This document shows, piece by piece, positions 16,154 through 61,587 of a stretch of DNA of 64,000 bases. Numbering within the stretch: the stretch's first letter is position 1; each line of letters starts with the position of its first letter. The position numbers were made by a program, and so were the translations under genes. The stretch spans positions 62,001 to 126,000 of IMG/VR virus record IMGVR_UViG_3300031344_000002; one strand, 5' to 3'. The notes under the pieces are model-generated. The model searched no databases, was not told the DNA's origin, and saw nothing but the letters and a program-made list of their open reading frames with translations.

Positions 16154-16792
16154 ATGATATTAAAAAAGATAGATTTACTCGAAATAATCGATTCGAATGG
16201 TGAGTTAATTGGTAAAAATGATACGCCTACAAATGGCAGTGATTTAGAAAGTCAAGCTAATAATACTACCGATTATAATGCCAAAATTGGCACACAACCC
16301 TTTAGATATGATATGTTGGGTCGTTTTGGATTTTCCAATTTAAGTTTTACTGAGGGAAAAGAAAATCAAGAACAGAAAGAATTATTAAAAGATTTGGCAG
16401 TACTTGTTCATGAAAAATATATGAAGGATTTACAATATTTTTATAAAAACCCCAATAAATTAAAAAGTGATTATAGAAAAGTTGTTGGTGATAAATTTCA
16501 TTCAGAGGAATGTCAAAAAGCAGATATGGAATGGGCAAAAAAAATAATTAAAATAATGGAACTATATTTCGAAAATGTATTTAAAGAACCAATTGACGAA
16601 ATTAATTCAATTACGGAAAGTAAGGTAGAGGAAGATAAACTCGTCAATAAAAAATCTGAAGATGAAATATCAAAAAAATCTGAAAACCAAGAAATTAAAA
16701 ACAAAAAACTCCAAAAAGTTGCTGGTTTAATCAATAAACTCGATAAAAAAGATATTGATAAACTAATAAATTTATTGGAAAGAAGTAGATAA
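16154..16792 (+). CDS. Hypothetical (putative virion-internal) protein
   Basis: 212-aa charged ORF behind a late motif; contains LLE and ITE motifs. Confidence 0.5.
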   Translation: MILKKIDLLEIIDSNGELIGKNDTPTNGSDLESQANNTTDYNAKIGTQPFRYDMLGRFGFSNLSFTEGKENQEQKELLKDLAVLVHEKYMKDLQYFYKNPNKLKSDYRKVVGDKFHSEECQKADMEWAKKIIKIMELYFENVFKEPIDEINSITESKVEEDKLVNKKSEDEISKKSENQEIKNKKLQKVAGLINKLDKKDIDKLINLLERSR

Positions 16793-17583
16793 TGAATAAT
16801 ATGGCGAATAAAGAATTATATGATAAAACCTATCCTGTGCCTCAAAACATACTTAAAAGTATTGAGGTGGCGAAAGCATCTACTTCAGATAGTAATGGTC
16901 TAAAAAGGGCAAATTTTATACTTAAAAACGGTGTTTTAACATATCAGGCATTAAAAAGATTAAAGAATTTTTTTGATTATTTTAATCCACAAACTCAAAA
17001 TAAAACACAATATGCACTTGCTGGTGGTGATTTAATGAAACGATTTATTGAAACATCGTTAGCGCAAGATAGGGCAGGTGTTGTACGTAGTAAGAAAATT
17101 AAACAGGATATAACCACCAATCCTAATTCGGAATTAAAACCTTATCAAAGACCAAGGTTAAACGAAGAAAGGAAAGAATTAAAAAAAAACGCTGTTGCAG
17201 TAATTGTCAATAATGATAATAAAATTTTATTACTTAAAAGAGCAGATGATAGTAAAATTTGGATGCCAAATAAATGGTCATTGGTTGGTGGTGAAATGAA
17301 AAAAGATGAAACACCACAACAAGCCATTGAGAGAGAAATACTTGAAGAAACTAAATTAGAAATTAAAAAATTTATAAAATCACTTAGTATTCAAAGAAAA
17401 ACTGATAGTATTGAACACGTATTTGCTTGTAGATATACTGGTGAAGAAACAGATGTTAAATTAAATGATGAAAATACAAAGTATGGCTGGTATGATGTTT
17501 CTGAAATGAAATATTTAGATACTGTACCACATTTAATAGAATATATTACACTTGTATTTAAATCATATGAAGATGAAAAATAA
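16792..17583 (+). CDS. Nudix hydrolase with N-terminal helical domain
   Basis: Nudix box GGEMKKDETPQQAIEREILEETKLE; an LNE motif sits at the domain junction. Confidence 0.85.
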   Translation: MNNMANKELYDKTYPVPQNILKSIEVAKASTSDSNGLKRANFILKNGVLTYQALKRLKNFFDYFNPQTQNKTQYALAGGDLMKRFIETSLAQDRAGVVRSKKIKQDITTNPNSELKPYQRPRLNEERKELKKNAVAVIVNNDNKILLLKRADDSKIWMPNKWSLVGGEMKKDETPQQAIEREILEETKLEIKKFIKSLSIQRKTDSIEHVFACRYTGEETDVKLNDENTKYGWYDVSEMKYLDTVPHLIEYITLVFKSYEDEK

Positions 17584-19656: not shown

Positions 19657-22600
19657 ATGACATACGAAGAATTTAAACAAAATTTTTTAGCGGATTTTCT
19701 TAATATAAAATCATTTGCAGGTAGAATACAATATGCTAATGAACATCTATCAAGAATTGGTAGTGGTAGTGGTAGGATTGTGTATGATATTGATGGTCAA
19801 AAAGTATTAAAATTAGCAAAAAATGCTAAAGGTATTGCACAAAATAAAGCAGAAGCTGGTATTGGATATTATGGGGATACGCAACATATTGTTACAATTA
19901 TTTATGATAATGCAGATGATGATAGTTGGTTAATTGCAGAAAAAGCAAAAAAAGTAAACGAAAAAAGAATTAAAGAATTAACGAGTATTCCAAGTCTTAA
20001 TGATTTGTATTATTATTTAAGAAATAATGAATCTGAAAATAAAGGTGGAAGTGGAATTTTTGGACAAAACGAAAATATTAAAAATCAATTAGATAATAAT
20101 GAATTTATCATTGATTTAATAGATTTTGTTGCAAATTATTCAATAAGTGTTGGTGATTTGGGTAGACCAAGTTCTTATGGTGAAGTACTCCGTGATGGTC
20201 AACCAACAATTGTATTAACAGATTATGGATTAAATGATGAAGTATATGATACACATTATAATCCACAAAAAAAGCAAAAATATCGTATGTATGAATTATA
20301 CAATTTTGCTGATGGTAATGATGATATTCTTTCTGATATAGGTAATGTTGGACAAGACCAAAGACATGGAATGTGGGCATTAATGCCATATGGTGTAGGT
20401 GATGGCGATGGTGTAATAAATGAAGAATTTAAAGAATTTATTATAAGAAGAAGCATATATCCAAATAAACCAATAAAGAATATGCCAGAACTTGTAGATA
20501 ATTTTCATGAATGTGTAAATAATCTTAAAGAAACATTAAATCATGTAGATGATAAGAAAAAATTCTATAATAATTTATTGGAACTTCAAAAATATCTTAT
20601 TTCTCAAAATTATTATGATAGAGAACCACTTAGTAGTGAAGAATATGTTATAAATGAAGATATTGAACAACAATCGCCACAAGTTCAAAAATTTACATTA
20701 ACTGATGTAAATTATGCAACTGAAATTGCTAAGACTAGTGCTGAAAAATTAGGGTTTAAAATATTAAAAACAATTGGCGGTGGTTCAAATGGTTTTGCAT
20801 TTGATATTGGCGATACAAAAATTTTTAAACTTTCTGCTGATATTAGTGAAGCAGATGCAGCAACAAAATTAATAAGAGTAAAACCAACACATCTTGCAAT
20901 TGTTTATAATTTATATAAAATAGTGGATACTGAAAAAAATCAGGCATTCTTTGGAATAATCGAACGTCATATAACAGATAAACCACTTCAACAATTTAAT
21001 CGAAACATAGATATTATTAATAGTATTATGCCAAATAATATGTCGATAGTTGATTTTTATATAATGATGAAAAAGAATTTTGATTATAATAATTTAATTA
21101 ATTTAGCAAAAAATATACTTACAGAAAAACCTGAAGTAAATATTTCAAATATAGAAAGACAACAAGCATATGATTGGATGATAGGATTGTTCGAAATTAA
21201 AAAAGAATTATTGAGTTATAATATTAAATCAGATGATTATGGTAATCCAGAAAATCTTGGATATGAGGGGGGTATTTTAAAATTCTTTGATTTTGGTGGT
21301 TATCGAGGTGTTAATGAACCTGATTTGGGAGATGCAAATATTATATTTTTACCTGAAAACGAAGAAATATTAGATGAAAAATATAATAGAAATATTGCAG
21401 ATAATATAGCCAATCAAATTGCAAAAACAAAAGGATATAATGAACCAAAATATGTAGATGCTGGTGAATATGGTGTTGCTTATGATATTGGTGATGATAA
21501 AATTTTAAAAATAACTGCAGATAATAGTGAAGCAGCAGAAAATTTAAAACTTATAAATAAACCATTAAAATATATAGCACAACCATATAATGTATTTACA
21601 ATCGATTCAAAAAATACATATATTTCTAAAACATATGCAATTGTTTTGGAAAAATTAAAAACAGACCCACAAAAATTTAAAAGACTTAAAGAAAGAATTG
21701 ATTTTATTTTTGGAAAAATATTTAATCTCAGACTTTATGATATTATTGATTATTATATAAATGGATATGGGGACATAGATACAAAAAAAATTGATGGATA
21801 TATGTCAAAAAATCCAGAAGATGCTGAATTTTTTTATTCTATATTAAGAATTGCTGAAGAAGCAAAACAATATGGAGTTGAAAGTTTGGATTATTTTAAT
21901 TATACTAATTTAGGATATAAAAAAAATGGAGTAATTGCATTTTTTGATGTGGGATTTAGTAATGGTTACTTACAACCGAATGGTGCAGAAAATATAAAAA
22001 TAACTGAAGATGGAACTTCAAAATTCTCAACACCAAATAGTATTGGACAAGATAATTTTCCACCATATGAAAATAATGATACATCTCCAGTTACAGATAA
22101 TAACGTACCAACAACTCCAGAAAGTGTAAAAGAAGATTTAGAATATCATCATGTTGTAGGTGATGCAACACAAGATAAATTTGCTCTTGATGAAATTGGA
22201 AAAAAATCATTTATGAAGGGAGCACAAGCTGTTACAGTAAAAAAGAAATGTAGATTAGGTGGTTTGGGAAATACAAGTGTAGCTTGTAATCAAGGTGATA
22301 TTAATAATCTTGATATTAAAACAATTAATGAAAATAATAATATTGATTTATTAAAATTGCAATTAGCACAAGCAGCACAAAAAGTTTATAATGAATGGGA
22401 ACAAGATGAAAATGGTATGGATTGTACATTAGGTTCTGGTGGTATATGTCAAGATATTGCTGGTGCAATGTGTGATATATTAATAAATAATAATATTGAA
22501 TGTACAACAGTATCTCAGCAAATTGGTGACCAACATGTTTATGTTGTCGCTCAAACAGACGATGGTATATATGATATAGATATTTCACCATATTTATATG

Positions 22601-25600
22601 AAGAAGGTAGTGGTTATTGTTGGAAAAAAATACCTGATGTTGAATTTAATGAAAGATATATTAATATAAATAAAATAAGTTCAGACCCTAATGATTATGA
22701 AAAATATATAATTAATGAAAATTATAATAAAAAAATTAATGAACAATCAATTAATGAAACAAATTTACCGCATAATAAAACTTTTTGGGCATGGGTGTCA
22801 CCAGATAATAAATTCACTGAAGTATCTAAACTTCAACATGCAGGATTTATTGAAGGAAAATATCCTGAACTATCATATGATTTAGATGCGTTATTTTATC
22901 AAGCATTTAGAGAAGGTTGGGTACGAGTAATTTATGAATATAACTCAGACAGATTTATGGGTACTTTATCTATGAATGGATTTGATAAAGAAAGAGTTAA
23001 ATCAGTATTTAAGGACATGTTTTTTGATTTAATTAAATATGGAAATAATATAATTTATTTAGATTATGAAGTTGGTGGTAATGCTGATATAATAAGAACA
23101 GGTAATGCGGAAGGAAAAGCAAAATTGGTGAATTATGTAAATGAACAATCAATTAAAGATTTTGAAAAACAAATTGAAAAAGATAATAAAGATGATAAAT
23201 TAGATAAACTTCTTTTATTTGAAGAAGATGACTATAAAGTATATGCAGTTAATGGTAAATATGTAAGAAGTAAAAATCCGGGACTGAATTTTGATGAATG
23301 GGTTGATGGCGGTCATCATTATGTTGATTTAGACCTACCAAAAAAAGAACAAAAATACGCTAAACATATTCCAGAAGATGAAATTTGGGTTGATGATGTA
23401 TTCATTATAAAACCTGATGATTTAGGCGCAATATTATTACATGAAACACTTGAAAGACATTTAATGAAATACTATGGTTTGAAATATAGTAATGATGGCG
23501 AAGGTAAAGATGGTGCTCATGAAATTGCAAATAAAGCAGAAGTAGAATTTAGAGAAAGAGTAAAAAATGGTTTTGGTCGTGATGTTAGTGAAGAAATTTA
23601 TACTAAATTTGTAAAAAATTATACAAAGAAACATCCAAAAAAGAAATTAAAAATTAATGAAGAAAATTATGTTGGAAAAGCATATAGAGTGAATTCTAAT
23701 TTCATTCAATCTAAAGGAACTACTGCAGGTGATGTTGTTAGATTTGAAATGAAAGAATTAGGTAATGTTGATGATTTTAATATAACTCCTGAAAAATTAA
23801 AAGAACTTGATAAATATCCAGCTAAAGATATTGTCTGGATTACAAAAACATTTGAGGATGCAAAAAGATATTCTAATGAAGATGACTTTTCAGATATCGA
23901 TGAATTTGATATTAATAATGGCGAAATTATTGGTGAAGATGGTGATGGTGGATATCTTATTTTAATTAAAAAACATAATTTAAATGAATCAATAATGATT
24001 GAAGATGATTCTCAATCAAATAATAAAATTACTGGTTTTGTAAATAATTTAAAACAAAAACCATTTATTCAATCACTTATAAATGGTTTAAAATCAGATG
24101 TTTATGTTGTTGGAGGGGCTGTTCGTGACCTTATTCTTAATAAACCAAACAAAGATATTGATTTGGTTGTAGGAAAAGTACCTATAGATACATTAATTTC
24201 ACAATTACAAAAATTTGGTAAAGTTGATGTTGTTGGTAAATCATTTGGTGTTATTAAATTTATTGATAAAGATGGTACTGACTATGATATAGCATTACCA
24301 AGGGTTGATAGAAAAAATGACGAAGGTGGTTATCGTGGCTTTGATGTTCAAAGTGATGAAAATCTCCCAATTGAAGATGAACTTATTAGAAGAGATGCAC
24401 GTTTCAATGCTATGGCAATTAATATCAATACTGGTAAATTTATTGACCCTTTAGGTGGATTAGATGATATTAAAAAGAAACAAATATCTGCAGCAAATCC
24501 TGATGCGTTTTCAGACGACCCATTAAGAGCATTAAGATTTTGTTCGTTTGCTAGTCGTTTTGGTTTCACAATTGAACCACAAACGATGCAAATGATTAAA
24601 GATAATGCGAGTAGAATTAAAGAAATTCCGCCAGAAAGAATATTAATTGAATTTGATAAAATTTTAAAAAAAGGCGACAAACGTATTGGTATACAACTGC
24701 TTAAAGACACTGGTTTATTTCAACAAATTTTTAATTTTGATTTAAAACAATCAACAATTGATAGAAGTCCATTTGAAGAAGTTAAAACAATGGGTGAGTT
24801 TATTTATTTATTAACACGATTATTACCAAATCCTGCAGAATTTTATAAAAATAATTTAAAAGGTGATATTGATACTTATAAGGAAATTAAAGCACTTGAA
24901 ATGGCATTTGATAGTGGTGAAGCAACTAATTTAATTGAAGCACGAACAGTTGCGCATAATATGTATGTAACATCACCACAATCACTTCAAAGCCAAATAA
25001 TACCTAGTGTAATTGAAACCGCAGCACAAGAATTATTACAAGGCAAATATCCAAAAGCAGTTGGTGAACTAGCAATTAATGGCAATGATTTAATTCAATT
25101 TGGATTAAAAGGTAAAGAGATTGGTGATATGTTAAAATCATTATTGTTAAAGGTATATTCAAATAATGTTAGGAATAATCGAGATGATTTATTAAATTTG
25201 ACAAGTCAAAAAAATAAATCAATAAAACAAGAAGGTGTTGCAGATAAATATGCAGAAAAAACTTTTAATGTTCCTGACTCAAATACTGCAATGGATGTTA
25301 AAGCAATGGGTGGTATAGAAAAAAATAAAGAAAAACCATATGCAATTAGTGAAGAGGGTGATTTATTTTTTAAGAACCCAAAATCATTAACAAATTTTGA
25401 TAAAAATGTTAGGGCAATTGCTGATAGTGATGGAAACTTATTTGTTGCACAAGTAAATGGTAATTTTCTTCATGGAGATATTGCAAGAACATTAGGAATT
25501 GTTGGATGGATATATGAAAATAATGATTATGTGTTGTTACATAGAGCAGGAAACACAAATAATTTTGGATTGAGTGATAGTAATTATAATGATATTAGAA

Positions 25601-26610
25601 ATTTTAAAGATATACGTGAAAGTGCAATACAAATATTAAATAAAACAAAAAAAAGAAATCCACAATATAATTTTTACCTTAAATATTTTAACAATATAGA
25701 TGATGATAGTATGCCTATTGATAATATAGGTCTTAATGAAAATATTGATGGTCAACATAAAACAATTACTGAAGAATATCATGAAGTTGGTGATGGTAAA
25801 TATGTAGTAAATAATAAAATTGTTGATATTAATTTCTTTGTTAATGAATATAATAAATGGAATACTGAAAGTGGAAGAGGAAGAGCAGAATATTCAGACC
25901 CAAATGAAGCATCAGTATTAGAATTTTTACAAAATAATTATGAAGATTTTAGCCATAATGAAAAATTAAAACATAAATTATTATGGAAACTTACAGATAA
26001 TGACGTTTTAAATGAAACACCAATTGATTCAATAACTTCAGATAATATAATAACACCGCAATATATAAAAGATGTAGAACGTAGTGATAATTATGAAAGA
26101 TATATTGAATATTATAAATATGAAAATAATTTGGAGGATGAAGATAAGGAAGTTATTGAACAAAATGAAGATTTTAAAAAATGGTTTATATGGGAATTAA
26201 AAAATAAATATGATGATGTAATAGATAAAATAAAAGAGAAAATAAAACCAAATGATACTATTGATATTTGGAGAGAAATGACAGTTGATGATAATTGGAT
26301 TTATCATATTGGTACACAAGGAAAACATTTAGGTATTTATTGGTCTTGGGAAGAAAATGCTGCTGAAGCACATTGGGGAGATAGTAAAAAATATAATAAA
26401 GCAATAATAAAAACATCTGTGAAAGAAGACAATATTGATTGGACTAATACAATATATGCTAATATGGATTTGGCTCTTGGCGAAGATGAAAAAGAAATAA
26501 CATTATTTAAAAATACATCATTAAAAATTGAAGAATTATATATAAATGGTGAAGATATTATGGATTCTCCGCAAGCAATACCAATTAAAAATAAAATATT
26601 TTATGCTTAA
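19657..26610 (+). CDS. Giant polyvalent multi-enzyme protein: three kinase-like domains, Cys-His-Asp domain, zincin, two ART-like domains, CCA-adding/poly(A) polymerase-family nucleotidyltransferase
   Basis: Kinases: GSGSGRIVY/VLKL/DYG, GGGSNGFAF/IFKL/DFG, DAGEYGVAY/ILKI/DVG. Other motifs: GICQD...HVYV...DID; HETLERH; GGAVRD..DID..RRD..FNA..DDPLR; WR..YWS..EDEKE. Confidence 0.8.
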   Translation: MTYEEFKQNFLADFLNIKSFAGRIQYANEHLSRIGSGSGRIVYDIDGQKVLKLAKNAKGIAQNKAEAGIGYYGDTQHIVTIIYDNADDDSWLIAEKAKKVNEKRIKELTSIPSLNDLYYYLRNNESENKGGSGIFGQNENIKNQLDNNEFIIDLIDFVANYSISVGDLGRPSSYGEVLRDGQPTIVLTDYGLNDEVYDTHYNPQKKQKYRMYELYNFADGNDDILSDIGNVGQDQRHGMWALMPYGVGDGDGVINEEFKEFIIRRSIYPNKPIKNMPELVDNFHECVNNLKETLNHVDDKKKFYNNLLELQKYLISQNYYDREPLSSEEYVINEDIEQQSPQVQKFTLTDVNYATEIAKTSAEKLGFKILKTIGGGSNGFAFDIGDTKIFKLSADISEADAATKLIRVKPTHLAIVYNLYKIVDTEKNQAFFGIIERHITDKPLQQFNRNIDIINSIMPNNMSIVDFYIMMKKNFDYNNLINLAKNILTEKPEVNISNIERQQAYDWMIGLFEIKKELLSYNIKSDDYGNPENLGYEGGILKFFDFGGYRGVNEPDLGDANIIFLPENEEILDEKYNRNIADNIANQIAKTKGYNEPKYVDAGEYGVAYDIGDDKILKITADNSEAAENLKLINKPLKYIAQPYNVFTIDSKNTYISKTYAIVLEKLKTDPQKFKRLKERIDFIFGKIFNLRLYDIIDYYINGYGDIDTKKIDGYMSKNPEDAEFFYSILRIAEEAKQYGVESLDYFNYTNLGYKKNGVIAFFDVGFSNGYLQPNGAENIKITEDGTSKFSTPNSIGQDNFPPYENNDTSPVTDNNVPTTPESVKEDLEYHHVVGDATQDKFALDEIGKKSFMKGAQAVTVKKKCRLGGLGNTSVACNQGDINNLDIKTINENNNIDLLKLQLAQAAQKVYNEWEQDENGMDCTLGSGGICQDIAGAMCDILINNNIECTTVSQQIGDQHVYVVAQTDDGIYDIDISPYLYEEGSGYCWKKIPDVEFNERYININKISSDPNDYEKYIINENYNKKINEQSINETNLPHNKTFWAWVSPDNKFTEVSKLQHAGFIEGKYPELSYDLDALFYQAFREGWVRVIYEYNSDRFMGTLSMNGFDKERVKSVFKDMFFDLIKYGNNIIYLDYEVGGNADIIRTGNAEGKAKLVNYVNEQSIKDFEKQIEKDNKDDKLDKLLLFEEDDYKVYAVNGKYVRSKNPGLNFDEWVDGGHHYVDLDLPKKEQKYAKHIPEDEIWVDDVFIIKPDDLGAILLHETLERHLMKYYGLKYSNDGEGKDGAHEIANKAEVEFRERVKNGFGRDVSEEIYTKFVKNYTKKHPKKKLKINEENYVGKAYRVNSNFIQSKGTTAGDVVRFEMKELGNVDDFNITPEKLKELDKYPAKDIVWITKTFEDAKRYSNEDDFSDIDEFDINNGEIIGEDGDGGYLILIKKHNLNESIMIEDDSQSNNKITGFVNNLKQKPFIQSLINGLKSDVYVVGGAVRDLILNKPNKDIDLVVGKVPIDTLISQLQKFGKVDVVGKSFGVIKFIDKDGTDYDIALPRVDRKNDEGGYRGFDVQSDENLPIEDELIRRDARFNAMAININTGKFIDPLGGLDDIKKKQISAANPDAFSDDPLRALRFCSFASRFGFTIEPQTMQMIKDNASRIKEIPPERILIEFDKILKKGDKRIGIQLLKDTGLFQQIFNFDLKQSTIDRSPFEEVKTMGEFIYLLTRLLPNPAEFYKNNLKGDIDTYKEIKALEMAFDSGEATNLIEARTVAHNMYVTSPQSLQSQIIPSVIETAAQELLQGKYPKAVGELAINGNDLIQFGLKGKEIGDMLKSLLLKVYSNNVRNNRDDLLNLTSQKNKSIKQEGVADKYAEKTFNVPDSNTAMDVKAMGGIEKNKEKPYAISEEGDLFFKNPKSLTNFDKNVRAIADSDGNLFVAQVNGNFLHGDIARTLGIVGWIYENNDYVLLHRAGNTNNFGLSDSNYNDIRNFKDIRESAIQILNKTKKRNPQYNFYLKYFNNIDDDSMPIDNIGLNENIDGQHKTITEEYHEVGDGKYVVNNKIVDINFFVNEYNKWNTESGRGRAEYSDPNEASVLEFLQNNYEDFSHNEKLKHKLLWKLTDNDVLNETPIDSITSDNIITPQYIKDVERSDNYERYIEYYKYENNLEDEDKEVIEQNEDFKKWFIWELKNKYDDVIDKIKEKIKPNDTIDIWREMTVDDNWIYHIGTQGKHLGIYWSWEENAAEAHWGDSKKYNKAIIKTSVKEDNIDWTNTIYANMDLALGEDEKEITLFKNTSLKIEELYINGEDIMDSPQAIPIKNKIFYA

Positions 26611-26666
26611 AAATTACTAAATAAAACATACAATATCTAAAAAATGAAAATTCTTCTATATTTTAT

Positions 26667-26676
26667 AGTATTTATA
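26667..26676 (+). promoter_or_regulatory. Putative late promoter motif AGTATTTATA
   Basis: 12 nt upstream of GTG 26689. Confidence 0.55.
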
Positions 26677-26688
26677 GAAAAATGAATT

Positions 26689-27558
26689 GTGTTAGATATT
26701 AATGTAATTAAAAATAAAAGAATTTTTAAATTAACAAAAGATGAATTAAATTATTTGTATCGTGATTTAAATATGTCACAAACTGATATTGGAAAATTAC
26801 TTAATACTGATTCAAGTAATGTTTCAAGAAAATTTAAAAAAGAAAGCATAATTGCAGATAAAGGAAATGAATATATTTCAAAAAAACAATTACAAACACA
26901 AATTGAATTAACTAAAGAAATTTTAGTAATTGAATATCCAAACAATTCAATTACTAAAATAGCAAAAAAATTTGGTGTTAGCTATTCTTTTATTTATAAA
27001 AAATTAAATGAATTTGATATTCCAATACAAAAAAATGGTTATTTTCAAACAAAATATATTGATAATATAACATATGATACATTATTTGATTTATATTGGA
27101 ATAAAAAATTAAGTTTGTTTGAAATAGGTACAATATTTTGTGCTGATAAAAATTTAATTAAAAGAAGATTAAAAGAATTTAAAATAAAAATTAGAACAAA
27201 AAAAGAGGCATTTAATTTAGTTGAATATAAAAAGAAGAAAAGTGAAATTATAAAATCTATAATTGGAAATGAGTTCAAACCAGTTTATAATAAAGAATCA
27301 ATTCCAATAATTGAAGAATTTGGTAAAAAAATGGGATATAATTTTATTCATGCCGAAAATGGTGGTGAACATTTAATAGATGAATTATTTTATTGGGTGG
27401 ATGGATATGATTATGATAAAAATGTTGTTGTTGAATATTACGAAAAGGCACATAAATATAAAAAAGAATATGATAGAAATAGAATTTCAAGAATTAAACA
27501 ATTTTTAGAATGTAAAATTTTTATAATTTATGAAAATGGAATAATAGAAGAAAAATAA
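26689..27558 (+). CDS. Putative homing endonuclease (tandem HTH modules plus C-terminal PD-(D/E)xK/Vsr-like nuclease)
   Basis: Three HTH-like repeats (SQTDIGKLL, SITKIAKKFGVS, SLFEIGTIF) followed by NGGE...YWVDGYD...VVEYYE..H. Confidence 0.6.
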   Translation: MLDINVIKNKRIFKLTKDELNYLYRDLNMSQTDIGKLLNTDSSNVSRKFKKESIIADKGNEYISKKQLQTQIELTKEILVIEYPNNSITKIAKKFGVSYSFIYKKLNEFDIPIQKNGYFQTKYIDNITYDTLFDLYWNKKLSLFEIGTIFCADKNLIKRRLKEFKIKIRTKKEAFNLVEYKKKKSEIIKSIIGNEFKPVYNKESIPIIEEFGKKMGYNFIHAENGGEHLIDELFYWVDGYDYDKNVVVEYYEKAHKYKKEYDRNRISRIKQFLECKIFIIYENGIIEEK

Positions 27559-27569
27559 AATAATAAAAA

Positions 27570-27953
27570 ATGAATAATATATCTTATAGTGCAGTCGTTC
27601 TTGATGATAGGTCAAAACAAAGACTTATTGAACGATTTAAAACAATTATTCCAGAAGGATTCGAAATTGTTGCGCATCACATGACTATTAACATGGGTGA
27701 AATCGACCCAAAACTTGAAAAATATCTAGGATTGCCAGTACGATTAAGTGTTAATGAATTTGCTATAGATGATAAAGTAATGGCTGTGGGGGTTAGCGGT
27801 TTTGAAACACACAACGCTAAAGCACATATTACATTAGCTGTAAATCGAGCAAATGGTGGTAAACCAATGATGTCAAATAAATTAACTAATTGGCAACCAT
27901 TAAAAAGACCATTATATATAACAGGTAAAGTAATAGAAGTGGAATTTAAGTAA
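27570..27953 (+). CDS. 2H phosphoesterase (tRNA-ligase cyclic phosphodiesterase-like)
   Basis: Two HxT motifs, AHHMTI and AHITLA, plus YSAVVLD and GKPMMSN. Confidence 0.75.
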   Translation: MNNISYSAVVLDDRSKQRLIERFKTIIPEGFEIVAHHMTINMGEIDPKLEKYLGLPVRLSVNEFAIDDKVMAVGVSGFETHNAKAHITLAVNRANGGKPMMSNKLTNWQPLKRPLYITGKVIEVEFK

Positions 27954-27954
27954 C

Positions 27955-28458
27955 ATGGCTGATTGGAAAGAATCATCAAGAATGGGTTTTGAATTTGAAG
28001 ATTTTTGTTTAAAAGATTTAAATGAAAAATTATTTCCTCTTGCATATAAAAATATGAAAAAAGAAGAGTATAGTTATTATGATATTATACTTTTTAATGG
28101 TAAATTTGCAGAAAAACAAAAAACAATTGAATGTAAGTTTGATAAAATGGGTAGTGTTAGTGGTAACATTTGTATTGAAACTGGATGTTGGGGGAGGCAA
28201 TCAGGATTATTAATTACAAAAGCTGATTATTGGATTATTGGTGATGGTATTATAACATATATTGCTAAAACAAAAAGAATACATGATTGTATTGTTGAAA
28301 ATATAAATCAAATCGAGTATAAGAAAAAAACAAAAATTGAACAAAAGAAAGGTATTTTTAAAGAAATGGATATGTATATTATTCCAAAAAGATTCTTTGA
28401 ACCTTATTGTGAAGAAATTAATAATATTAATGAAATGAAATATAATTGTTTATTATGA
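27955..28458 (+). CDS. PD-(D/E)xK-family nuclease-like protein
   Basis: GFEFE...YDIIL...TIECKFD...GNICIE...SG...TKADYW. Confidence 0.6.
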   Translation: MADWKESSRMGFEFEDFCLKDLNEKLFPLAYKNMKKEEYSYYDIILFNGKFAEKQKTIECKFDKMGSVSGNICIETGCWGRQSGLLITKADYWIIGDGIITYIAKTKRIHDCIVENINQIEYKKKTKIEQKKGIFKEMDMYIIPKRFFEPYCEEINNINEMKYNCLL

Positions 28459-28462
28459 TTAA

Positions 28463-29050
28463 ATGTATTTAGAAATGGAAAATAATATTAAAAGATTAAT
28501 TATCAGTGACTTAGATGGAACTTTGATTAATTCACCAATGCCAGAAACAGGTAAAGTTCAATGGTCTGAGAAAATGAAAACGCCATATAAATATCAAGGT
28601 TGGTGGGGTCGTCCAGAAAGTTTGGATTTAAACGTTTTTGATATTAAACCATTTTCAAGTGTATTGAATCAATTAAAAGAAGAACAGGCAAAGCCAAATA
28701 CTTATGTAATAATACTTACATCAAGAATGGAAAAACTACGTCCACAAGTTCAAGCAATACTTGATGCAAATCATATTGTTGTTGATAAACTTGATATGAA
28801 ACGTGCAGAAGGAGATAAAGGAAAGAAAGTTTTGAGATATGTGGAGCAATTTCCAGAATTGGAAGAAATAAATGTTTACGATGATAGAGATACAGACATT
28901 CAATCTTATGTAGCAATTAAAAATCAAATTCCAAAAAGTATTAGATTTAATATATATTTAGCAAAAGAAGGTAAATTATCTTTATTAGAAAATAGATTTA
29001 CATTATTAAATATTATTCGTGAAGAAATTCAAAATATTTTAAAAAATTAA
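28463..29050 (+). CDS. HAD-family phosphatase, RNA-repair (Swiss Army Knife HAD/Pnkp-like) type
   Basis: DLDGTL (motif I), NSP..., GWW, LTSR (motif II), K, YDDR (motif IV). Confidence 0.75.
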   Translation: MYLEMENNIKRLIISDLDGTLINSPMPETGKVQWSEKMKTPYKYQGWWGRPESLDLNVFDIKPFSSVLNQLKEEQAKPNTYVIILTSRMEKLRPQVQAILDANHIVVDKLDMKRAEGDKGKKVLRYVEQFPELEEINVYDDRDTDIQSYVAIKNQIPKSIRFNIYLAKEGKLSLLENRFTLLNIIREEIQNILKN

Positions 29051-29056
29051 AACAAC

Positions 29057-29066
29057 TGTATTTATA
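29057..29066 (+). promoter_or_regulatory. Putative late promoter motif TGTATTTATA
   Basis: 19 nt upstream of ATG 29086. Confidence 0.6.
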
Positions 29067-29085
29067 ATAAAAATTAATAAACATT

Positions 29086-29940
29086 ATGTTAAAAAATGGA
29101 AGACCATATCATTTACCACAAATAAGTATGCCATATGACATTGTTTTAAATAAACTTGATGAAGAAGGAATTAAATATGAATTAGTTTCATTGAATCCAA
29201 GTGAAGACGATGGAATAAAAACATCTCAAAATGTGGTGTATTCAGATGAAATGGAAAAATGTAATGTTGATGATACAAATCCAATATGGCTTTCAAATGA
29301 TGGTGAAAATATTAATATTTGCGATGGGCATCACAGGTATGTTAAATCATTGATTGACAATAAGTTACTTAAAGCAGTTAAACTCGATTTAAATGAAAAA
29401 GATGCTAGTAGAGTGTTAAATAAAATTCAAGATATTTACGAATATGAACAAGCACGTAATATGGAAGAAGTGGAAGACCAAGATGCAATTAATTATTATG
29501 ATAATAATGCAGAAAGCGGTAAAGAAAATACTAATACAGAATTTTTAGATTCATTAGAAGAAGATAATTTAGCACTACAAGCAGAAGCACCAAGTAAAAA
29601 TGAAAAAACAATTGTTGCATATAGAAAAGAACCAATTAAAGAAAATTCAATTATTGGAAATTTTTTTATATTAAAACCAATTGATGGGTATGATAAATAT
29701 GAAATTAATTTCGAAAATTTATTAGACGTAAATGCATTAGGTATTGTTTATAAAGATGGACAAGAACCAGTTGATATATTAGCGAAAAACTGGTTTCCAC
29801 ATATAAATTTTGAAAAATTAAGCGAGCAATATAATGTTCCAGCATTAAATCTAAAAAATAAAGCAATTGCAGAAAAAGCAATGAAAAATGGTTATGATGG
29901 AATTAAATATAATGATACATTAATACAAGGATTAAAATAA
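29086..29940 (+). CDS. ParB/Srx-like domain plus possible ART-like C-terminal domain
   Basis: PIWLS...ICDGHHRY (ParB-like); C-terminal half has AYR...GNFF...GYDGIKY. Confidence 0.55.
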   Translation: MLKNGRPYHLPQISMPYDIVLNKLDEEGIKYELVSLNPSEDDGIKTSQNVVYSDEMEKCNVDDTNPIWLSNDGENINICDGHHRYVKSLIDNKLLKAVKLDLNEKDASRVLNKIQDIYEYEQARNMEEVEDQDAINYYDNNAESGKENTNTEFLDSLEEDNLALQAEAPSKNEKTIVAYRKEPIKENSIIGNFFILKPIDGYDKYEINFENLLDVNALGIVYKDGQEPVDILAKNWFPHINFEKLSEQYNVPALNLKNKAIAEKAMKNGYDGIKYNDTLIQGLK

Positions 29941-29948
29941 TTAAAAAC

Positions 29949-30320
29949 ATGAGTACATTTAAAATTATAAACATAACAAATCTCGCTTCAAAGCGAGATT
30001 TTAAATACAATTCAATACTTGATATTGATTATGTAGATAAAATGACAAAAAAAATTATTAGTATAAAACCCGGTGATACTGCTTATTTAACAATACCGTC
30101 ATTACCTTTGTCAGTACATAGGTTAAGAGTTAAAAATTTAATAACTGTAGATGAAATTGATAGTATAGAGTTTGCCAAATCAATGAAGAATATAAAAACT
30201 AAAACAGTTATTAAAGAAGTTGTTGATGAAGAAGAAAAAAAATCTATTCAGAAAAGTAAAAAAAAATATTCTAAAAAAGAAGAAGAAGCAGATACTGAAG
30301 TAGATATGAAGCACATATAA
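29949..30320 (+). CDS. Hypothetical protein
   Basis: 123-aa ORF with charged tail, followed by a terminator. Confidence 0.55.
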   Translation: MSTFKIINITNLASKRDFKYNSILDIDYVDKMTKKIISIKPGDTAYLTIPSLPLSVHRLRVKNLITVDEIDSIEFAKSMKNIKTKTVIKEVVDEEEKKSIQKSKKKYSKKEEEADTEVDMKHI

Positions 30321-30344: not shown

Positions 30345-30370
30345 AAAGCCAACATTTTGTTGGCTTTTAT
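30345..30370 (+). terminator. Intrinsic terminator
   Basis: aaagccaac-atttt-gttggcttt followed by a T-run. Confidence 0.75.
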
Positions 30371-60804: not shown

Positions 60805-61587
60805 ATGAAAAAAATTTTAGCTTTTTTAAAACAAAAGAATAATGCAATAATTACTGCGGTAATTATTATCATATTAATTCTTTCAGCAATTGTTTATTTT
60901 CAACATAAAAAAATTGCAAACCTTAATGATAAATATCAAAGTGAAGTTAAATTAAAAAATGCTTTAGTTGATACTGCCAAAGTTTATAAAAATAAAGAAA
61001 ATGAATGGGTTACAGAAAAACTAACATTACAAGGAAGTCTTAAACTTATTAATGATGTTAATAACCATCTCACTGCATCAGAACAAGAATTAACAAAAAG
61101 AGTTAAAGAATCGGAAAAAAATAATTCAGTTATTACTGCAGCACTTATTCAAACTAAAGTCGAATTGGATTCATTAAAAAGTGGAAAAGTTAGTATTAAT
61201 GATAAAGATAGTAGTATTGCATTTGCAGATTCAACAAAAAATATTAAATATAATATTGAAATTTTACATGTTAGACCAATAAGTTTAACAATATTACCAA
61301 TAATGAAATTCAATAAATTTGAATTACCCAATAAGCAATATATTCAATTTTTTTGGAGTGATAAGAAAAAAGATTATCCCATTTCATTTAGCGTAAGTAA
61401 TTCTAATGATTATTTTAAAACAGTAAATATTGATAGCTATGCTATTCCACAATTACAAAAAGATGTTATAAATCCAAGTGCTTGGCAAAAATTTACTACT
61501 TGGATAAAAAAAAGTGGTAGTTTTATAATAACTGTTGGAGTTTCTGGTGCTGCCGGAGCAGGATTATATGCTATTTTGCATAAATAA
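60805..61587 (+). CDS. Membrane-anchored coiled-coil protein, possible spanin-like lysis protein
   Basis: N-terminal TM segment, coiled coil, C-terminal hydrophobic segment; late motif. Confidence 0.45.
   Translation: MKKILAFLKQKNNAIITAVIIIILILSAIVYFQHKKIANLNDKYQSEVKLKNALVDTAKVYKNKENEWVTEKLTLQGSLKLINDVNNHLTASEQELTKRVKESEKNNSVITAALIQTKVELDSLKSGKVSINDKDSSIAFADSTKNIKYNIEILHVRPISLTILPIMKFNKFELPNKQYIQFFWSDKKKDYPISFSVSNSNDYFKTVNIDSYAIPQLQKDVINPSAWQKFTTWIKKSGSFIITVGVSGAAGAGLYAILHK

What the first reader, a model, noticed from the sequence alone, without database searches (positions are those of the whole stretch)
23989..29050. Clustered tRNA 3'-end repair toolkit: CCA-adding NTase, 2H cyclic phosphodiesterase and RNA-repair HAD phosphatase, with no ligase
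Seen: a class II NTase domain (GGAVRD, DID, RRD..FNA, DDPLR) inside the polyprotein, followed within about 4 kb by a 2H enzyme with two HxT motifs (27570) and a DLDGTL...GWW...YDDR HAD (28463). Established: 2H enzymes open 2',3'-cyclic phosphates, Pnkp-type HADs remove 3' phosphates, and CCA enzymes rebuild acceptor ends. Inference: the three steps in sequence would restore tRNAs whose acceptor ends were clipped by host defence nucleases or toxins. This differs from T4 Pnkp/Rnl1 anticodon repair because no RNA ligase is visible in the window.
Basis: partly seen in the sequence, partly recalled or inferred. Interest (0 to 1): 0.75.

Follow-up and report, generated by a model that had tools for sequence, protein, structure and literature searches.

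The report
Phage tRNA tail repair trio
An uncultured jumbo phage encodes a CCA-adding enzyme inside a giant multi-enzyme protein, followed by a cyclic-phosphodiesterase gene and a phosphatase gene; related phages fuse all three into one protein, so together they most likely clean and rebuild damaged tRNA tails, a possible counter to bacterial immunity that clips those tails.

Summary
A class II, CCA-type nucleotidyltransferase occupies aa 1482-1847 of a 2317-aa ORF. A 127-aa 2H phosphoesterase follows; its fold is nearest the cyclic-phosphodiesterase (CPD) domain of eukaryotic tRNA ligase Trl1 and CNPase. Then comes a 195-aa HAD phosphatase of the 'Swiss Army Knife' RNA-repair type (HAD_SAK_1).

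The functional link rests on gene fusions, not only proximity. Of 120 giant NTase homologues, 64 carry this 2H in the same polypeptide. About 700-aa proteins in other huge contigs are 2H-NTase-HAD fusions. Other relatives fuse the 2H to a polynucleotide-kinase-like domain beside Rnl1/Rnl2 RNA ligases.

Three points need correction:
- The 'polyprotein' is a polyvalent protein: kinase-like repeats here, with ART, GNAT, NUDIX and SAM-lyase domains in homologues.
- 'No ligase' holds only for the window. The same record has an Rnl2-type ligase about 62 kb downstream of the HAD, and all seven complete relatives checked encode an RNA ligase.
- The 2H should yield a 2'-phosphate.

Best reading: a tRNA 3'-end healing and CCA-rebuilding module, analogous to E. 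coli Cca (NTase+HD). A rival is maturation of the phage's own CCA-less tRNAs. This is a new variant of a known kind and has no biochemical test yet.

The parts
19657..26610 (+). 2317-aa polyvalent-type multidomain ORF (P0001)
   Evidence: Single open frame. At least 209 giant homologues (the 120 listed are 1280-2903 aa) share its NTase and N-terminal modules and carry variable ART-PolyVal, GNAT, NUDIX, ParB and 2H domains.
19657..22071 (+). Three tandem kinase-like modules (aa 1-335, 336-580, 581-805), each with a glycine-rich loop followed by a conserved Lys
   Evidence: Modules 2 and 3 are paralogous (31% identity over 217 aa, E 5e-18). Language-model neighbours of aa 1-330 are all kinase families, including Kinase-PolyVal PF18762 and Phage_T7_kinase (a lead only). 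Pfam hmmscan found nothing here.
24100..25197 (+). Class II tRNA nucleotidyltransferase (CCA-adding type): head, neck, body and tail, aa 1482-1847
   Evidence: Pfam and PHROG matches. Best PDB match is the B. stearothermophilus CCA enzyme 1miv, E 1.6e-25, with a second match in the tail domain. NCBIfam PRK13299 (CCA NTase) scores 153 bits over profile positions 22-394 of 396; pcnB scores 95 bits. Motifs A-E are conserved in 232 homologues.
26689..27558 (+). 289-aa HTH/HNH-homing-endonuclease-like gene, a variable insert between the polyvalent ORF and the 2H gene
   Evidence: PHROG 8446/7545 (HNH endonuclease) E about 3e-10, plus weak HTH Pfam hits. Found in only 1 of 49 related loci. The closest relative has a different 218-aa ORF at this position.
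27570..27953 (+). 127-aa minimal 2H phosphoesterase of the Trl1-CPD/CNPase clade (predicted RNA 2',3'-cyclic phosphodiesterase)
   Evidence: Two HxT motifs are invariant or at least 90% conserved. AF2 pLDDT 95. Foldseek best matches are the mouse CNPase catalytic domain (TM 0.77) and the Trl1 CPD domains of S. pombe and Arabidopsis (E about 8e-7, TM 0.72-0.75); LigT/ThpR reach only TM 0.44-0.49. Fused to the NTase in many homologues.
27955..28458 (+). 167-aa optional ORF with a D...ExK pattern (possible PD-(D/E)xK nuclease), probably not part of the repair function
   Evidence: PHROG 13596, function unknown. Present in only 25 of 80 syntenic loci. Motif positions aa 43 and aa 59-61. The fold was not tested.
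28463..29050 (+). 195-aa HAD phosphatase, HAD_SAK_1 family (predicted RNA 2'/3'-phosphomonoesterase)
   Evidence: Pfam 27.6 bits against a cut-off of 25.6; PHROG 415 'polynucleotide kinase'. D16, D18, T86, K119 and D141 are invariant. AF2 pLDDT 90.6. Best AFDB matches are the N-terminal HAD halves of YMR265C and S. pombe C4.02c. 36% identical to the C-terminal domain of the NTase-HAD fusion P0213, E 9e-32.
29086..29940 (+). 284-aa conserved neighbour with a DGHHR motif (ParB/Srx-like lead)
   Evidence: Motif at aa 80-84. Present in 79 of 80 syntenic loci. No Pfam or PHROG hit. A homologous giant protein, P0035, carries ParBc PF02195.
29949..30320 (+). 123-aa conserved ORF of unknown function, last gene before the terminator-like site
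   Evidence: Present in 78 of 80 syntenic loci. No family hit.
30345..30367 (+). Terminator-like hairpin followed by a T run. It is the first such site on the + strand after the polyvalent ORF, so 19657-30320 may be one transcription unit
   Evidence: 10-bp stem, 3-nt loop, T-rich tail. Only 3 such sites in 13.8 kb, against 2.0 expected by chance, so this is weak evidence.

Best explanation
The NTase domain of the polyvalent protein, the 127-aa 2H enzyme and the SAK-type HAD phosphatase form one functional module. The module heals and rebuilds the 3' end of tRNA (or of a tRNA-like RNA).

Proposed order:
1. A tRNA loses part or all of its CCA tail. If a metal-independent RNase or spontaneous transesterification caused the loss, the end is a 2',3'-cyclic phosphate.
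2. The Trl1-CPD/CNPase-like 2H opens the cyclic phosphate to a 2'-phosphate with a free 3'-OH.
3. The HAD removes the remaining phosphomonoester.
4. The class II NTase re-adds C, C and A.

What is shown: the identity and intactness of the three catalytic domains, their fusion into single polypeptides in relatives, and the conserved gene order. What is inferred: the substrates, the order of steps and the source of the damage.

Because the NTase sits in a polyvalent protein, a class proposed to enter the cell with the phage DNA, the module may act early as a counter-defence. Packaging of this protein has not been tested.

The 2H and HAD could also serve as end-healing enzymes for the phage's separately encoded RNA ligase.
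For: Domain identities.

Catalytic residues are conserved across 232 NTase, 34 2H and 17 HAD homologues.

Fusions:
- 64 of 120 giant NTase homologues carry this 2H in the same chain, and 3 of those also carry the HAD in the order NTase>2H>HAD.
- Of 120 smaller homologues, 31 have the 2H, 14 have the HAD, and 8 have all three as 2H-NTase-HAD.
- Among the top 150 representatives of the 2H family, 71 exceed 180 aa. Of these, 39 contain the NTase, 6 the HAD (4 of them together with the NTase) and 7 a P-loop kinase.
- The kinase-2H fusions lie beside Rnl1- and Rnl2-type ligases.

Synteny: in 80 loci found with the HAD, the 2H is present in 76 and the NTase in 69, with HAD identity down to 37%.

Precedent: E. 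coli Cca joins the same NTase to an HD domain that removes 2',3'-cyclic phosphate from tRNA ends (PMC6961547, citing Yakunin 2004). Jumbo phages are predicted to use the CCA enzyme, 2H and SAK-HAD in RNA repair (PMC7824862).
Against: - There is no biochemical or expression evidence.
- The NTase scores below NCBIfam's equivalog cut-off (153 against 290 bits). CCA versus A-, CC- or poly(A)-adding specificity cannot be read from sequence.
- The Pfam matches of the 2H and the HAD only just pass their cut-offs.
- The 2H-HAD adjacency lies in a larger syntenic block that also holds a ParB-like gene, an unknown ORF and a glycosyltransferase, so adjacency alone is weak.
- Polyvalent-protein 2H domains have been predicted to be RNases or degraders of signalling nucleotides (PMC5512222).
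- A complete close relative has 33 CCA-less tRNA genes, so the NTase may simply mature phage tRNAs.
- Packaging or injection of the polyvalent protein is untested, and no MuF, portal or zincin-peptidase domain was detected in it.
Confidence: 0.6

Rival explanations
1. Housekeeping. The NTase matures the phage's own large set of tRNAs, whose genes lack CCA. The 2H and HAD are unrelated neighbours or serve another pathway.
For: The complete closest relative (348,923 bp) has 33 tRNA genes by ARAGORN, and 31 of them clearly lack an encoded CCA. The window's own record is only 66% complete and shows a single CCA-less tRNA. Class II NTases occur in 441 deposited phage records.
Against: Normal 3' processing leaves a 3'-OH, so this role does not explain the repeated fusion of the NTase to a cyclic phosphodiesterase and a phosphatase. 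No self-cleaving ribozyme that would leave cyclic phosphate on tRNA ends was found in the relative's tRNA array. A host with CCA-less tRNA genes already has a CCA enzyme. It also does not explain placement in a polyvalent protein.
Confidence: 0.15
2. End healing for ligase-dependent repair of anticodon-loop breaks. This is a T4-like pathway with Trl1-like healing enzymes. The 2H and HAD prepare 3' ends for the phage's Rnl2-type ligase encoded elsewhere, and the NTase is incidental.
For: The same record has an Rnl2-type ligase, and also HAD_SAK_2, an R2K ATP-grasp enzyme and a DNA ligase at 145-151 kb. All 7 complete relatives checked have Rnl2, Rnl1 or RtcB. Kinase-2H fusions sit next to Rnl1 and Rnl2 in L038. 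A solo 2H lies 3.6 kb from a PF09414 ligase in L030.
Against: In this phage family the ligase is never within 10 kb of the block. The dominant fusion partner of the 2H is the NTase (39 of 71 longer proteins), not a ligase (0 seen). The only P-loop polynucleotide-kinase-like gene found in the record carries an in-frame stop in its P-loop.
Confidence: 0.12
3. Anti-signalling. The 2H, and perhaps the HAD, destroy nucleotide second messengers of host immunity (2',3'-cyclic nucleotides, 2'-5' or cyclic oligonucleotides). This was predicted for 2H domains of polyvalent proteins.
For: PMC5512222 proposes this role for polyvalent 2H domains. Many homologous giant proteins carry a second, LigT/Acb1-like 2H (PF13563, PF23474). 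CNPase, the best solved structural match, hydrolyses 2',3'-cyclic nucleotides.
Against: The window's 2H matches the tRNA-ligase CPD domains better than LigT/ThpR. It is a different clade from the Acb1-like 2H that co-occurs with it in P0129. Its fusion partners are a tRNA NTase with body and tail domains, a polynucleotide-kinase-like P-loop and an RNA-repair HAD.
Confidence: 0.08
4. The NTase is a poly(A) polymerase or other tailing enzyme that marks host RNAs for decay as part of host takeover.
For: The Pfam family PolyA_pol covers both activities. pcnB models match at 95 and 63 bits. E. coli PAP structures match at E about 2e-17.
Against: Five CCA-enzyme equivalog models outrank pcnB. The best of them aligns end to end, including the tail domain, whereas pcnB aligns only to head and neck. 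The best PDB match is a CCA enzyme, with a second hit in its tail domain.
Confidence: 0.03

Closest known systems
E. coli multifunctional CCA addition/repair protein Cca (class II NTase + C-terminal HD phosphohydrolase)
   Same: It has the same NTase family. It couples CCA addition to removal of a 2',3'-cyclic phosphate or phosphate from tRNA 3' ends (PMC6961547, citing Yakunin 2004). Many phages carry this type.
   Different: No HD domain is present here: the PRK10885 model aligns only over positions 2-207 of 409, and there is no HD Pfam hit. Healing is instead assigned to a 2H and a HAD enzyme, encoded separately here and fused in relatives. The NTase is embedded in a 2317-aa polyvalent protein.
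CPD domain of fungal/plant tRNA ligase Trl1/RNL, and vertebrate CNPase (2H superfamily)
   Same: These are the best structural matches, and the Pfam family is tRNA_lig_CPD. The two HxT motifs are shared. Relatives have a kinase-CPD arrangement like Trl1 and CNPase.
   Different: It has 127 aa against about 170-210 aa, so it is a minimal version (TM by target only about 0.48). Sequence identity is 10-17%. There is no ligase domain in cis. It is of phage origin.
'Swiss Army Knife' (SAK) RNA-repair proteins, e.g. S. cerevisiae YMR265C and S. pombe C4.02c (HAD_SAK_1 + 2H)
   Same: The window's HAD matches their N-terminal halves best, and the window's 2H matches their C-terminal halves. The HAD Pfam family is HAD_SAK_1. 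Jumbo phages are known to carry stand-alone SAK HADs (PMC7824862).
   Different: Here the two are separate genes and are linked to a CCA-type NTase. In relatives the order is 2H-NTase-HAD or NTase-2H-HAD. From my own knowledge, the SAK proteins themselves have not been characterised biochemically.
Polyvalent proteins of phages and conjugative elements (Iyer et al. 2017, PMC5512222)
   Same: It is a giant multidomain protein with kinase-like modules. Homologues carry ART-PolyVal, GNAT, NUDIX, ParB, SAM-lyase and 2H domains. Smaller genes encoding the same kinds of domain lie next to it, as that paper describes.
   Different: That paper lists only minimal Pol-beta NTases, found in conjugative elements, and reports that polyvalent 2H domains never associate with RNA-repair genes. 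Here a full class II tRNA NTase is the constant core, and its 2H partner also fuses to a kinase next to RNA ligases. No zincin peptidase, MuF or portal domain was detected.
T4 Pnkp/Rnl1 (and bacterial Pnkp/Hen1) RNA repair
   Same: It has the same logic of healing broken RNA ends, and a HAD phosphatase is used. PHROG 415 'polynucleotide kinase' matches the HAD weakly. Pnkp1 of the Pnkp1/Rnl/Hen1 complex is a low-ranked structural match.
   Different: There is no kinase or ligase in the block. The cyclic phosphate is opened by a 2H enzyme rather than by the HAD itself. The rebuilding step is nucleotide addition rather than ligation.

Membership tests
Class II tRNA nucleotidyltransferase (CCA-adding enzyme) | Motif A (GGxVRD ... 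DxD) with two catalytic aspartates | tested here: met
   GGAVRD at aa 1486-1491 and DID at aa 1500-1502. Invariant or at least 98% conserved in 232 homologues.
Class II tRNA nucleotidyltransferase (CCA-adding enzyme) | Motifs B (RRD), C (DxxGGxxD), D ((E/D)DxxR nucleotide template) and E | tested here: met
   RRDARFNA at aa 1578, DPLGG at aa 1597, DDPLRALRF at aa 1620 and PPERILIEF at aa 1658. All are conserved.
Class II tRNA nucleotidyltransferase (CCA-adding enzyme) | Body and tail domains for tRNA binding, distinguishing it from poly(A) polymerase | tested here: met
   PRK13299 aligns over positions 22-394 of 396. pcnB aligns over positions 31-239 of 425 only. There is a second match to the 1miv tail domain and a weak PF13735 hit.
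Class II tRNA nucleotidyltransferase (CCA-adding enzyme) | Score above a curated equivalog cut-off | tested here: not met
   The best score is 153.1 bits against a cut-off of 290 for PRK13299. It is a divergent phage clade.
Class II tRNA nucleotidyltransferase (CCA-adding enzyme) | Adds exactly C, C, A to tRNA 3' ends | not testable with these tools
   This needs an enzyme assay.
2H phosphoesterase, Trl1-CPD/CNPase clade | Two H-x-T/S motifs | tested here: met
   H37-M-T39 and H86-I-T88. H37 and T39 are invariant; H86 and T88 are at least 90% conserved in 34 sequences.
2H phosphoesterase, Trl1-CPD/CNPase clade | 2H fold, closer to CPD/CNPase than to LigT/ThpR | tested here: met
   The model has pLDDT 95. 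CNPase gives TM 0.77. S. pombe and Arabidopsis tRNA ligase CPD domains give E about 8e-7 and TM 0.72-0.75. ThpR gives TM 0.44-0.49.
2H phosphoesterase, Trl1-CPD/CNPase clade | Pfam PF08302 above the gathering score | tested here: met
   23.5 bits against 23, which is marginal. The profile-versus-PDB sequence search found nothing real.
2H phosphoesterase, Trl1-CPD/CNPase clade | Hydrolyses RNA 2',3'-cyclic phosphate to 2'-phosphate | not testable with these tools
   This needs an enzyme assay.
HAD_SAK_1 (HAD phosphatase of SAK RNA-repair proteins) | HAD motifs I (DxDxT), II (T/S), III (K) and IV (acidic) | tested here: met
   D16, D18, T86, K119 and D141 are invariant in 17 sequences.
HAD_SAK_1 (HAD phosphatase of SAK RNA-repair proteins) | Family-level match by sequence and by fold | tested here: met
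   PF10307 scores 27.6 bits against 25.6. The best AFDB matches are YMR265C [41-251] and C4.02c [22-226], E about 2-3e-7.
HAD_SAK_1 (HAD phosphatase of SAK RNA-repair proteins) | Removes 2'- or 3'-phosphate from RNA ends | not testable with these tools
   This needs an enzyme assay. To my knowledge it has not been shown even for the family's founding members.
Polyvalent protein (Iyer et al. 2017) | Many unrelated conflict-type domains in one polypeptide, in variable combinations among homologues | tested here: met
   P0001 has 3 kinase-like modules, the NTase and uncharacterised regions. Homologues add ART-PolyVal, GNAT, NUDIX, ParB, SAM lyase and two kinds of 2H.
Polyvalent protein (Iyer et al. 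2017) | Processing peptidase (zincin-like MPTase) and/or MuF or portal anchor | tested here: inconclusive
   No Pfam hit. Only an HETLERH string at aa 1262, which is neither HExxH nor HExxxH.
Polyvalent protein (Iyer et al. 2017) | Packaged in the virion and delivered with the DNA | not testable with these tools
   This needs virion proteomics. The gene lies between replication genes and a baseplate module, which does not decide the question.
E. coli-type multifunctional Cca | C-terminal HD phosphohydrolase domain | tested here: not met
   PRK10885 aligns only over positions 2-207 of 409, and there is no HD Pfam hit. The module works like Cca but is not a member.
T4-type Pnkp/Rnl repair cassette | 5' kinase and RNA ligase encoded with the phosphatase | tested here: not met
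   Neither is in the block. The ligase lies about 62 kb downstream of the HAD gene in the same record. The AAA_33 kinase-like gene lies about 72 kb downstream of the HAD gene and is interrupted by a stop codon.

The most novel reading that the evidence does not exclude
A phage delivers, as part of a polyvalent protein present from the first moments of infection, a CCA-adding enzyme together with its own end-cleaning enzymes. These pre-empt host immunity that inactivates all tRNAs at their universal 3' tail. Candidate targets are acceptor-end RNases that leave cyclic phosphate, Cas12a3-type tail cleavage, or enzymes that block the 3' end with phosphate groups. This would be the first counter-defence that repairs the CCA tail. 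[quoted passage not shown]
Probability: 0.25. Interest if true: 0.85.

Novelty: new variant of a known kind. Interest (0 to 1): 0.6.

Why it matters
tRNA is a main target of bacterial antiviral immunity. The known phage answers are spare tRNAs and ligase-based repair of the anticodon loop. Cleavage of the universal CCA tail was recently shown to be an immune strategy that spare tRNAs cannot escape (PMC12851939).

This module is widespread. The NTase search returned at least 209 giant proteins and 1643 proteins in the stand-alone size range (which include gene fragments), and the 2H family has 2334 cluster representatives. It joins a CCA-adding enzyme to a cyclic phosphodiesterase and a phosphatase, and it sits in a class of protein thought to be injected. 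That makes it a concrete, testable candidate for a tail-repair counter-defence.

It also gives a natural one-chain enzyme (2H-NTase-HAD, about 700 aa) for testing the unproven activities of the SAK HAD and the minimal CPD-type 2H. Finally, it revises the published view that 2H domains of polyvalent proteins are unconnected to RNA repair.

Tried and rejected
- Sequence searches against PDB. The 2H profile gave only spurious Myb hits. The HAD gave nothing. Fold comparison was needed for both.
- Pfam, NCBIfam and PHROG scans of the rest of P0001, the ParB-like ORF, orf123 and the 167-aa ORF gave nothing usable.
- Rnl1 (PF09511) and RtcB (PF01139) are absent from the window's own, 66%-complete record.
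- I considered that self-cleaving ribozymes process the phage tRNA array and so create cyclic-phosphate ends that would need this trio. No ribozyme family matched in the relative's tRNA array at gathering score or at E<=1. Very small HDV-like 'theta' ribozymes may not be covered by the library.
- The only cultured-phage match of the 2H is in Agrobacterium phage Atu_ph07 (30% identity). It sits among topoisomerase, ClpX and IF3 genes, which is uninformative.
- The promoter scan showed no enrichment over shuffles.
- Alternative genetic code: not indicated. Coding density is 92% under table 11, and TAA, TGA and TAG are all used as stops.
- The Burroughs & Aravind 2016 RNA-repair paper could not be opened. 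Its content is cited only through PMC7824862 and from memory.
- No complex prediction was run, because I do not claim that the three separate proteins bind each other.

Full report
WHERE THE WINDOW LIES. The window is bases 62001-126000 of a 218,381-bp IMG/VR virus record. The record is 26% G+C and CheckV estimates it as 66% complete. It reads normally under table 11, with 92% coding density and all three stop codons in use. Related contigs are 200-460 kb, so this is an uncultured jumbo phage. No cultured phage is close. The best deposited match to the NTase is an uncultured 636-kb phage at 42% identity. The 2H has one 30% match, in Agrobacterium phage Atu_ph07.

THE OBSERVATION. Window 19657-26610 is a single 2317-aa ORF.
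- NTase. Residues 1482-1847 are a class II nucleotidyltransferase. Pfam finds PolyA_pol (E 1.3e-21), PolyA_pol_RNAbd (E 5.9e-18) and a weak tRNA_NucTran2_2 match; PHROG 2244 'tRNA nucleotidyltransferase' scores 2.1e-57.
- 2H. Window 27570-27953 encodes a 127-aa protein with HxT motifs at H37-M-T39 and H86-I-T88. H37 and T39 are invariant and H86 and T88 at least 90% conserved over 34 relatives, as is a GGKP motif. The Pfam match to tRNA_lig_CPD only just passes (23.5 against 23 bits).
- HAD. Window 28463-29050 encodes a 195-aa HAD. Motif I (D16, D18), T86, K119 and D141 are invariant over 17 relatives. HAD_SAK_1 scores 27.6 against 25.6 bits.

WHAT KIND OF NTase. The best solved relative is the Bacillus stearothermophilus CCA-adding enzyme (1miv, E 1.6e-25), with a second aligned stretch in its tail domain. 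E. coli poly(A) polymerase scores 2e-17. In NCBIfam, five CCA-enzyme equivalog models outrank PcnB. The best, PRK13299, aligns over positions 22-394 of 396 (153 bits), whereas pcnB (95 bits) aligns to head and neck only. All scores are below the equivalog cut-offs, so this is a divergent clade. No deletion is seen between motifs A and B in the alignment to 1miv, which argues against a CC-adding enzyme. I conclude it is a tRNA nucleotidyltransferase of the CCA type. The exact specificity needs an assay.

WHAT KIND OF 2H AND HAD. An AlphaFold model of the 2H (pLDDT 95) matches best the CNPase catalytic domain among solved structures (TM 0.77). Among Swiss-Prot models it matches best the CPD domains of S. 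pombe Trl1 and Arabidopsis tRNA ligase (E about 8e-7, TM 0.72-0.75). Bacterial and archaeal LigT/ThpR reach only TM 0.44-0.49. The HAD model (pLDDT 90.6) matches best the N-terminal halves of yeast YMR265C and S. pombe C4.02c. The C-terminal halves of those same two proteins were among the matches of the 2H model. These fungal proteins carry the 'Swiss Army Knife' RNA-repair architecture of HAD plus 2H, so the two phage genes together correspond to a split SAK core. By established enzymology of Trl1-CPD and CNPase (my own knowledge), the product of such a 2H is a 2'-phosphate with a free 3'-OH. The following phosphatase step is therefore probably a 2'-dephosphorylation, not the 3'-dephosphorylation of T4 Pnkp.

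THE DECISIVE EVIDENCE: FUSIONS.
- A search with the NTase region in the size class of the whole protein returned at least 209 proteins; the 120 listed are 1280-2903 aa and share 46-85% identity in the NTase. They carry variable other domains: ART-PolyVal, GNAT, NUDIX, ParB and two kinds of 2H.
- A BLAST census found the window-type 2H inside 64 of the 120 listed giants, mostly at the C terminus. Three of these also hold the HAD, in the order NTase>2H>HAD, which is the gene order in the window.
- A second search in the size class of a stand-alone enzyme gave 1643 hits. Of the 120 listed, 31 carry the 2H, 14 carry the HAD, and 8 carry all three as 2H-NTase-HAD proteins of about 700 aa.
- The N terminus of P0225 matches the 2H alignment with hhalign probability 100 and E 3e-45. 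The C terminus of P0213 is 36% identical to the window's HAD (E 9e-32). One such fusion lies on 290-340 kb contigs as an ordinary stand-alone gene.
- Starting from the 2H instead, the family has 2334 cluster representatives at E<=0.001. In the top 150, 79 are solo proteins and 71 are longer. Of the longer ones, 39 contain the NTase, 6 the HAD (4 of them together with the NTase) and 7 a P-loop kinase.
- The kinase-2H fusions (L038, L039) copy the kinase-CPD arrangement of Trl1 and CNPase. They lie beside Rnl1-type and Rnl2-type RNA ligases.
These independent fusions tie this 2H clade to RNA-end chemistry, and above all to the tRNA NTase.

SYNTENY. In 80 IMG/VR loci found with the HAD (identity down to 37%), the order is polyvalent/NTase > 2H > [optional 167-aa ORF] > HAD > ParB-like > orf123 > glycosyltransferase. 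The 2H is present in 76 loci, the NTase in 69, the ParB-like gene in 79 and the glycosyltransferase in 79; several of the loci lacking the 2H or the NTase stop at a contig end just upstream of the HAD, though not all. The genes therefore co-occur. Because unrelated genes share the block, synteny alone would be weak evidence.

In the window, a homing-endonuclease-like HTH/HNH gene (26689-27558) separates the polyvalent ORF from the 2H. It is seen in only one other locus, and the nearest relative has a different ORF there. This junction is variable, and in about half of the giant homologues (64 of 120) the 2H is simply the C-terminal domain.

THE 'POLYPROTEIN' IS A POLYVALENT PROTEIN. Its N-terminal third holds three kinase-like modules. 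Modules 2 and 3 are 31% identical (E 5e-18). The language-model neighbours are all kinases, including Kinase-PolyVal (a lead only). Homologues swap in ART-PolyVal, GNAT, NUDIX, SAM lyase and ParB. This fits the class described by Iyer et al. 2017 (PMC5512222), including the truncated kinases typical of Bacteroidetes and Verrucomicrobia phages and the small neighbouring genes that encode the same kinds of domain.

That paper lists only minimal Pol-beta NTases, in conjugative elements. It also states that polyvalent 2H domains were never seen with RNA ligases, and so proposes RNase or anti-signalling roles. The present family differs on both points. No zincin peptidase, MuF or portal domain was detected, and packaging is untested. 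The gene lies between replication genes (helicase, DNA polymerase, Nudix) and a baseplate module. A terminator-like hairpin at 30345-30367 is the first such site on the + strand after the ORF.

LIGASES AND tRNAs. The window has no ligase and no tRNA. The record has an Rnl2-type ligase at 149676-150680, next to a DNA ligase, an R2K ATP-grasp enzyme and a second SAK HAD (HAD_SAK_2, 70 bits). It also has an AAA_33 kinase-like gene with an in-frame TAA in its P-loop.

Of ten large relatives that carry the block, seven have PF09414 ligases. The two complete ones without it have Rnl1 (G002) or RtcB (G006). So all seven complete genomes checked encode an RNA ligase, always far from the block.

The complete nearest relative (348,923 bp) has 33 tRNA genes and a tmRNA in an array at about 238-268 kb, with an Rnl1-type ligase inside the array. 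Thirty-one of the 33 clearly lack an encoded CCA. The window's record probably lacks this array only because it is incomplete.

INTERPRETATION. The best-supported reading is a 3'-end healing and rebuilding module. The 2H opens a 2',3'-cyclic phosphate, the HAD removes the monoester, and the NTase restores CCA. It works like E. coli Cca, whose HD domain removes the cyclic phosphate before CCA repair (PMC6961547), but it uses two different healing enzymes. It extends published predictions for jumbo phages, which list the CCA enzyme, 2H and SAK-HAD separately as RNA-repair parts (PMC7824862).

Whether the damage is inflicted by host immunity is inferred. Bacterial Cas12a3 has recently been shown to cut tRNA CCA tails, and its authors note that no viral escape is known (PMC12851939). 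Cas12a3 cleaves with a RuvC nuclease domain (PMC12851939); by general knowledge of RuvC nucleases (my own knowledge, not stated in the passages I read) such cleavage should leave a 3'-OH and so need only the NTase, while metal-independent RNases would need the whole trio.

The main rival is plain maturation of the phage's CCA-less tRNAs. That role does not explain the healing-enzyme fusions, and no ribozyme that would leave cyclic-phosphate ends was found in the array. A shared role of the 2H and HAD with the distant ligase is plausible and not exclusive.

VERDICT. The trio is a real functional unit. The 'no ligase' contrast, the 'Pnkp-type' label and the '3'-phosphate' step need correction. 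Novelty: a new variant of a known kind. Interest 0.6.

Noticed in passing
window 26689-27558 (+): A 289-aa HTH/HNH-homing-endonuclease-like gene sits exactly where most homologues join the polyvalent protein to its C-terminal 2H domain. It is seen in only 1 of 49 related loci, and the closest relative has an unrelated 218-aa ORF there. A mobile insertion may have split the 2H off the giant ORF.
   Followed up: partly
window 27955-28458 (+): A 167-aa ORF lies between the 2H and the HAD and is present in only 25 of 80 syntenic loci. It has a D43 ... E59-x-K61 pattern suggesting a PD-(D/E)xK nuclease. PHROG 13596 has no assigned function.
   Followed up: partly
window 29086-29940 (+): A 284-aa ORF with a DGHHR motif (ParB/sulfiredoxin-like) is conserved in 79 of 80 loci directly after the HAD. 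It has no profile hit. ParB-type domains occur inside some homologous polyvalent proteins (P0035).
   Followed up: partly
window 23440-23460 (aa 1262-1268 of P0001): An HETLERH string with nearby GGHH and acidic residues could be a metal site. It fits neither HExxH nor the HExxxH of polyvalent-protein peptidases. No family hit.
   Followed up: no
outside the window: record 145495-150680 (locus L004 5495-10680): This is a second RNA-repair-like cluster: HAD_SAK_2 (70 bits), an R2K ATP-grasp enzyme, an ATP-dependent DNA ligase and an Rnl2-type RNA ligase.
   Followed up: partly
outside the window: record about 161963-162409 (locus L002 1441-1887): An AAA_33 polynucleotide-kinase-like gene next to a NADAR gene has an in-frame TAA inside its P-loop (…GLP*LGSGKS…). 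In the complete relative only its last 23 residues are recognisable, so the gene seems to be decaying.
   Followed up: partly
outside the window: record 61392-61480 (locus L005 17392-17480), about 520 nt before the window: This is the only tRNA in the record. It is 89 nt with a long variable arm, is called tRNA-Met (CAT) by ARAGORN, and has no encoded CCA. A type II shape with a CAT anticodon is unusual.
   Followed up: no
closest complete relative, loci L144-L147 (record about 238-283 kb): An array of about 33-36 tRNA genes without encoded CCA. It includes a tmRNA (L145 5210-5572), a CTA-anticodon (amber-reading) tRNA (L146 9686-9763) and an Rnl1-type ligase gene embedded in the array.
   Followed up: partly
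locus L029 3125-10378 (IMG/VR 3300025018_000187): A 2417-aa polyvalent homologue combines SAM lyase, ART-PolyVal, a LigT/Acb1-like 2H, the NTase and the CPD-type 2H in one chain. It therefore holds two different 2H clades side by side.
   Followed up: partly
window 16792-17583 (+): A Nudix hydrolase gene lies 2 kb upstream of the polyvalent ORF. Nudix domains also occur inside homologous polyvalent proteins (P0027, P0093).
   Followed up: no
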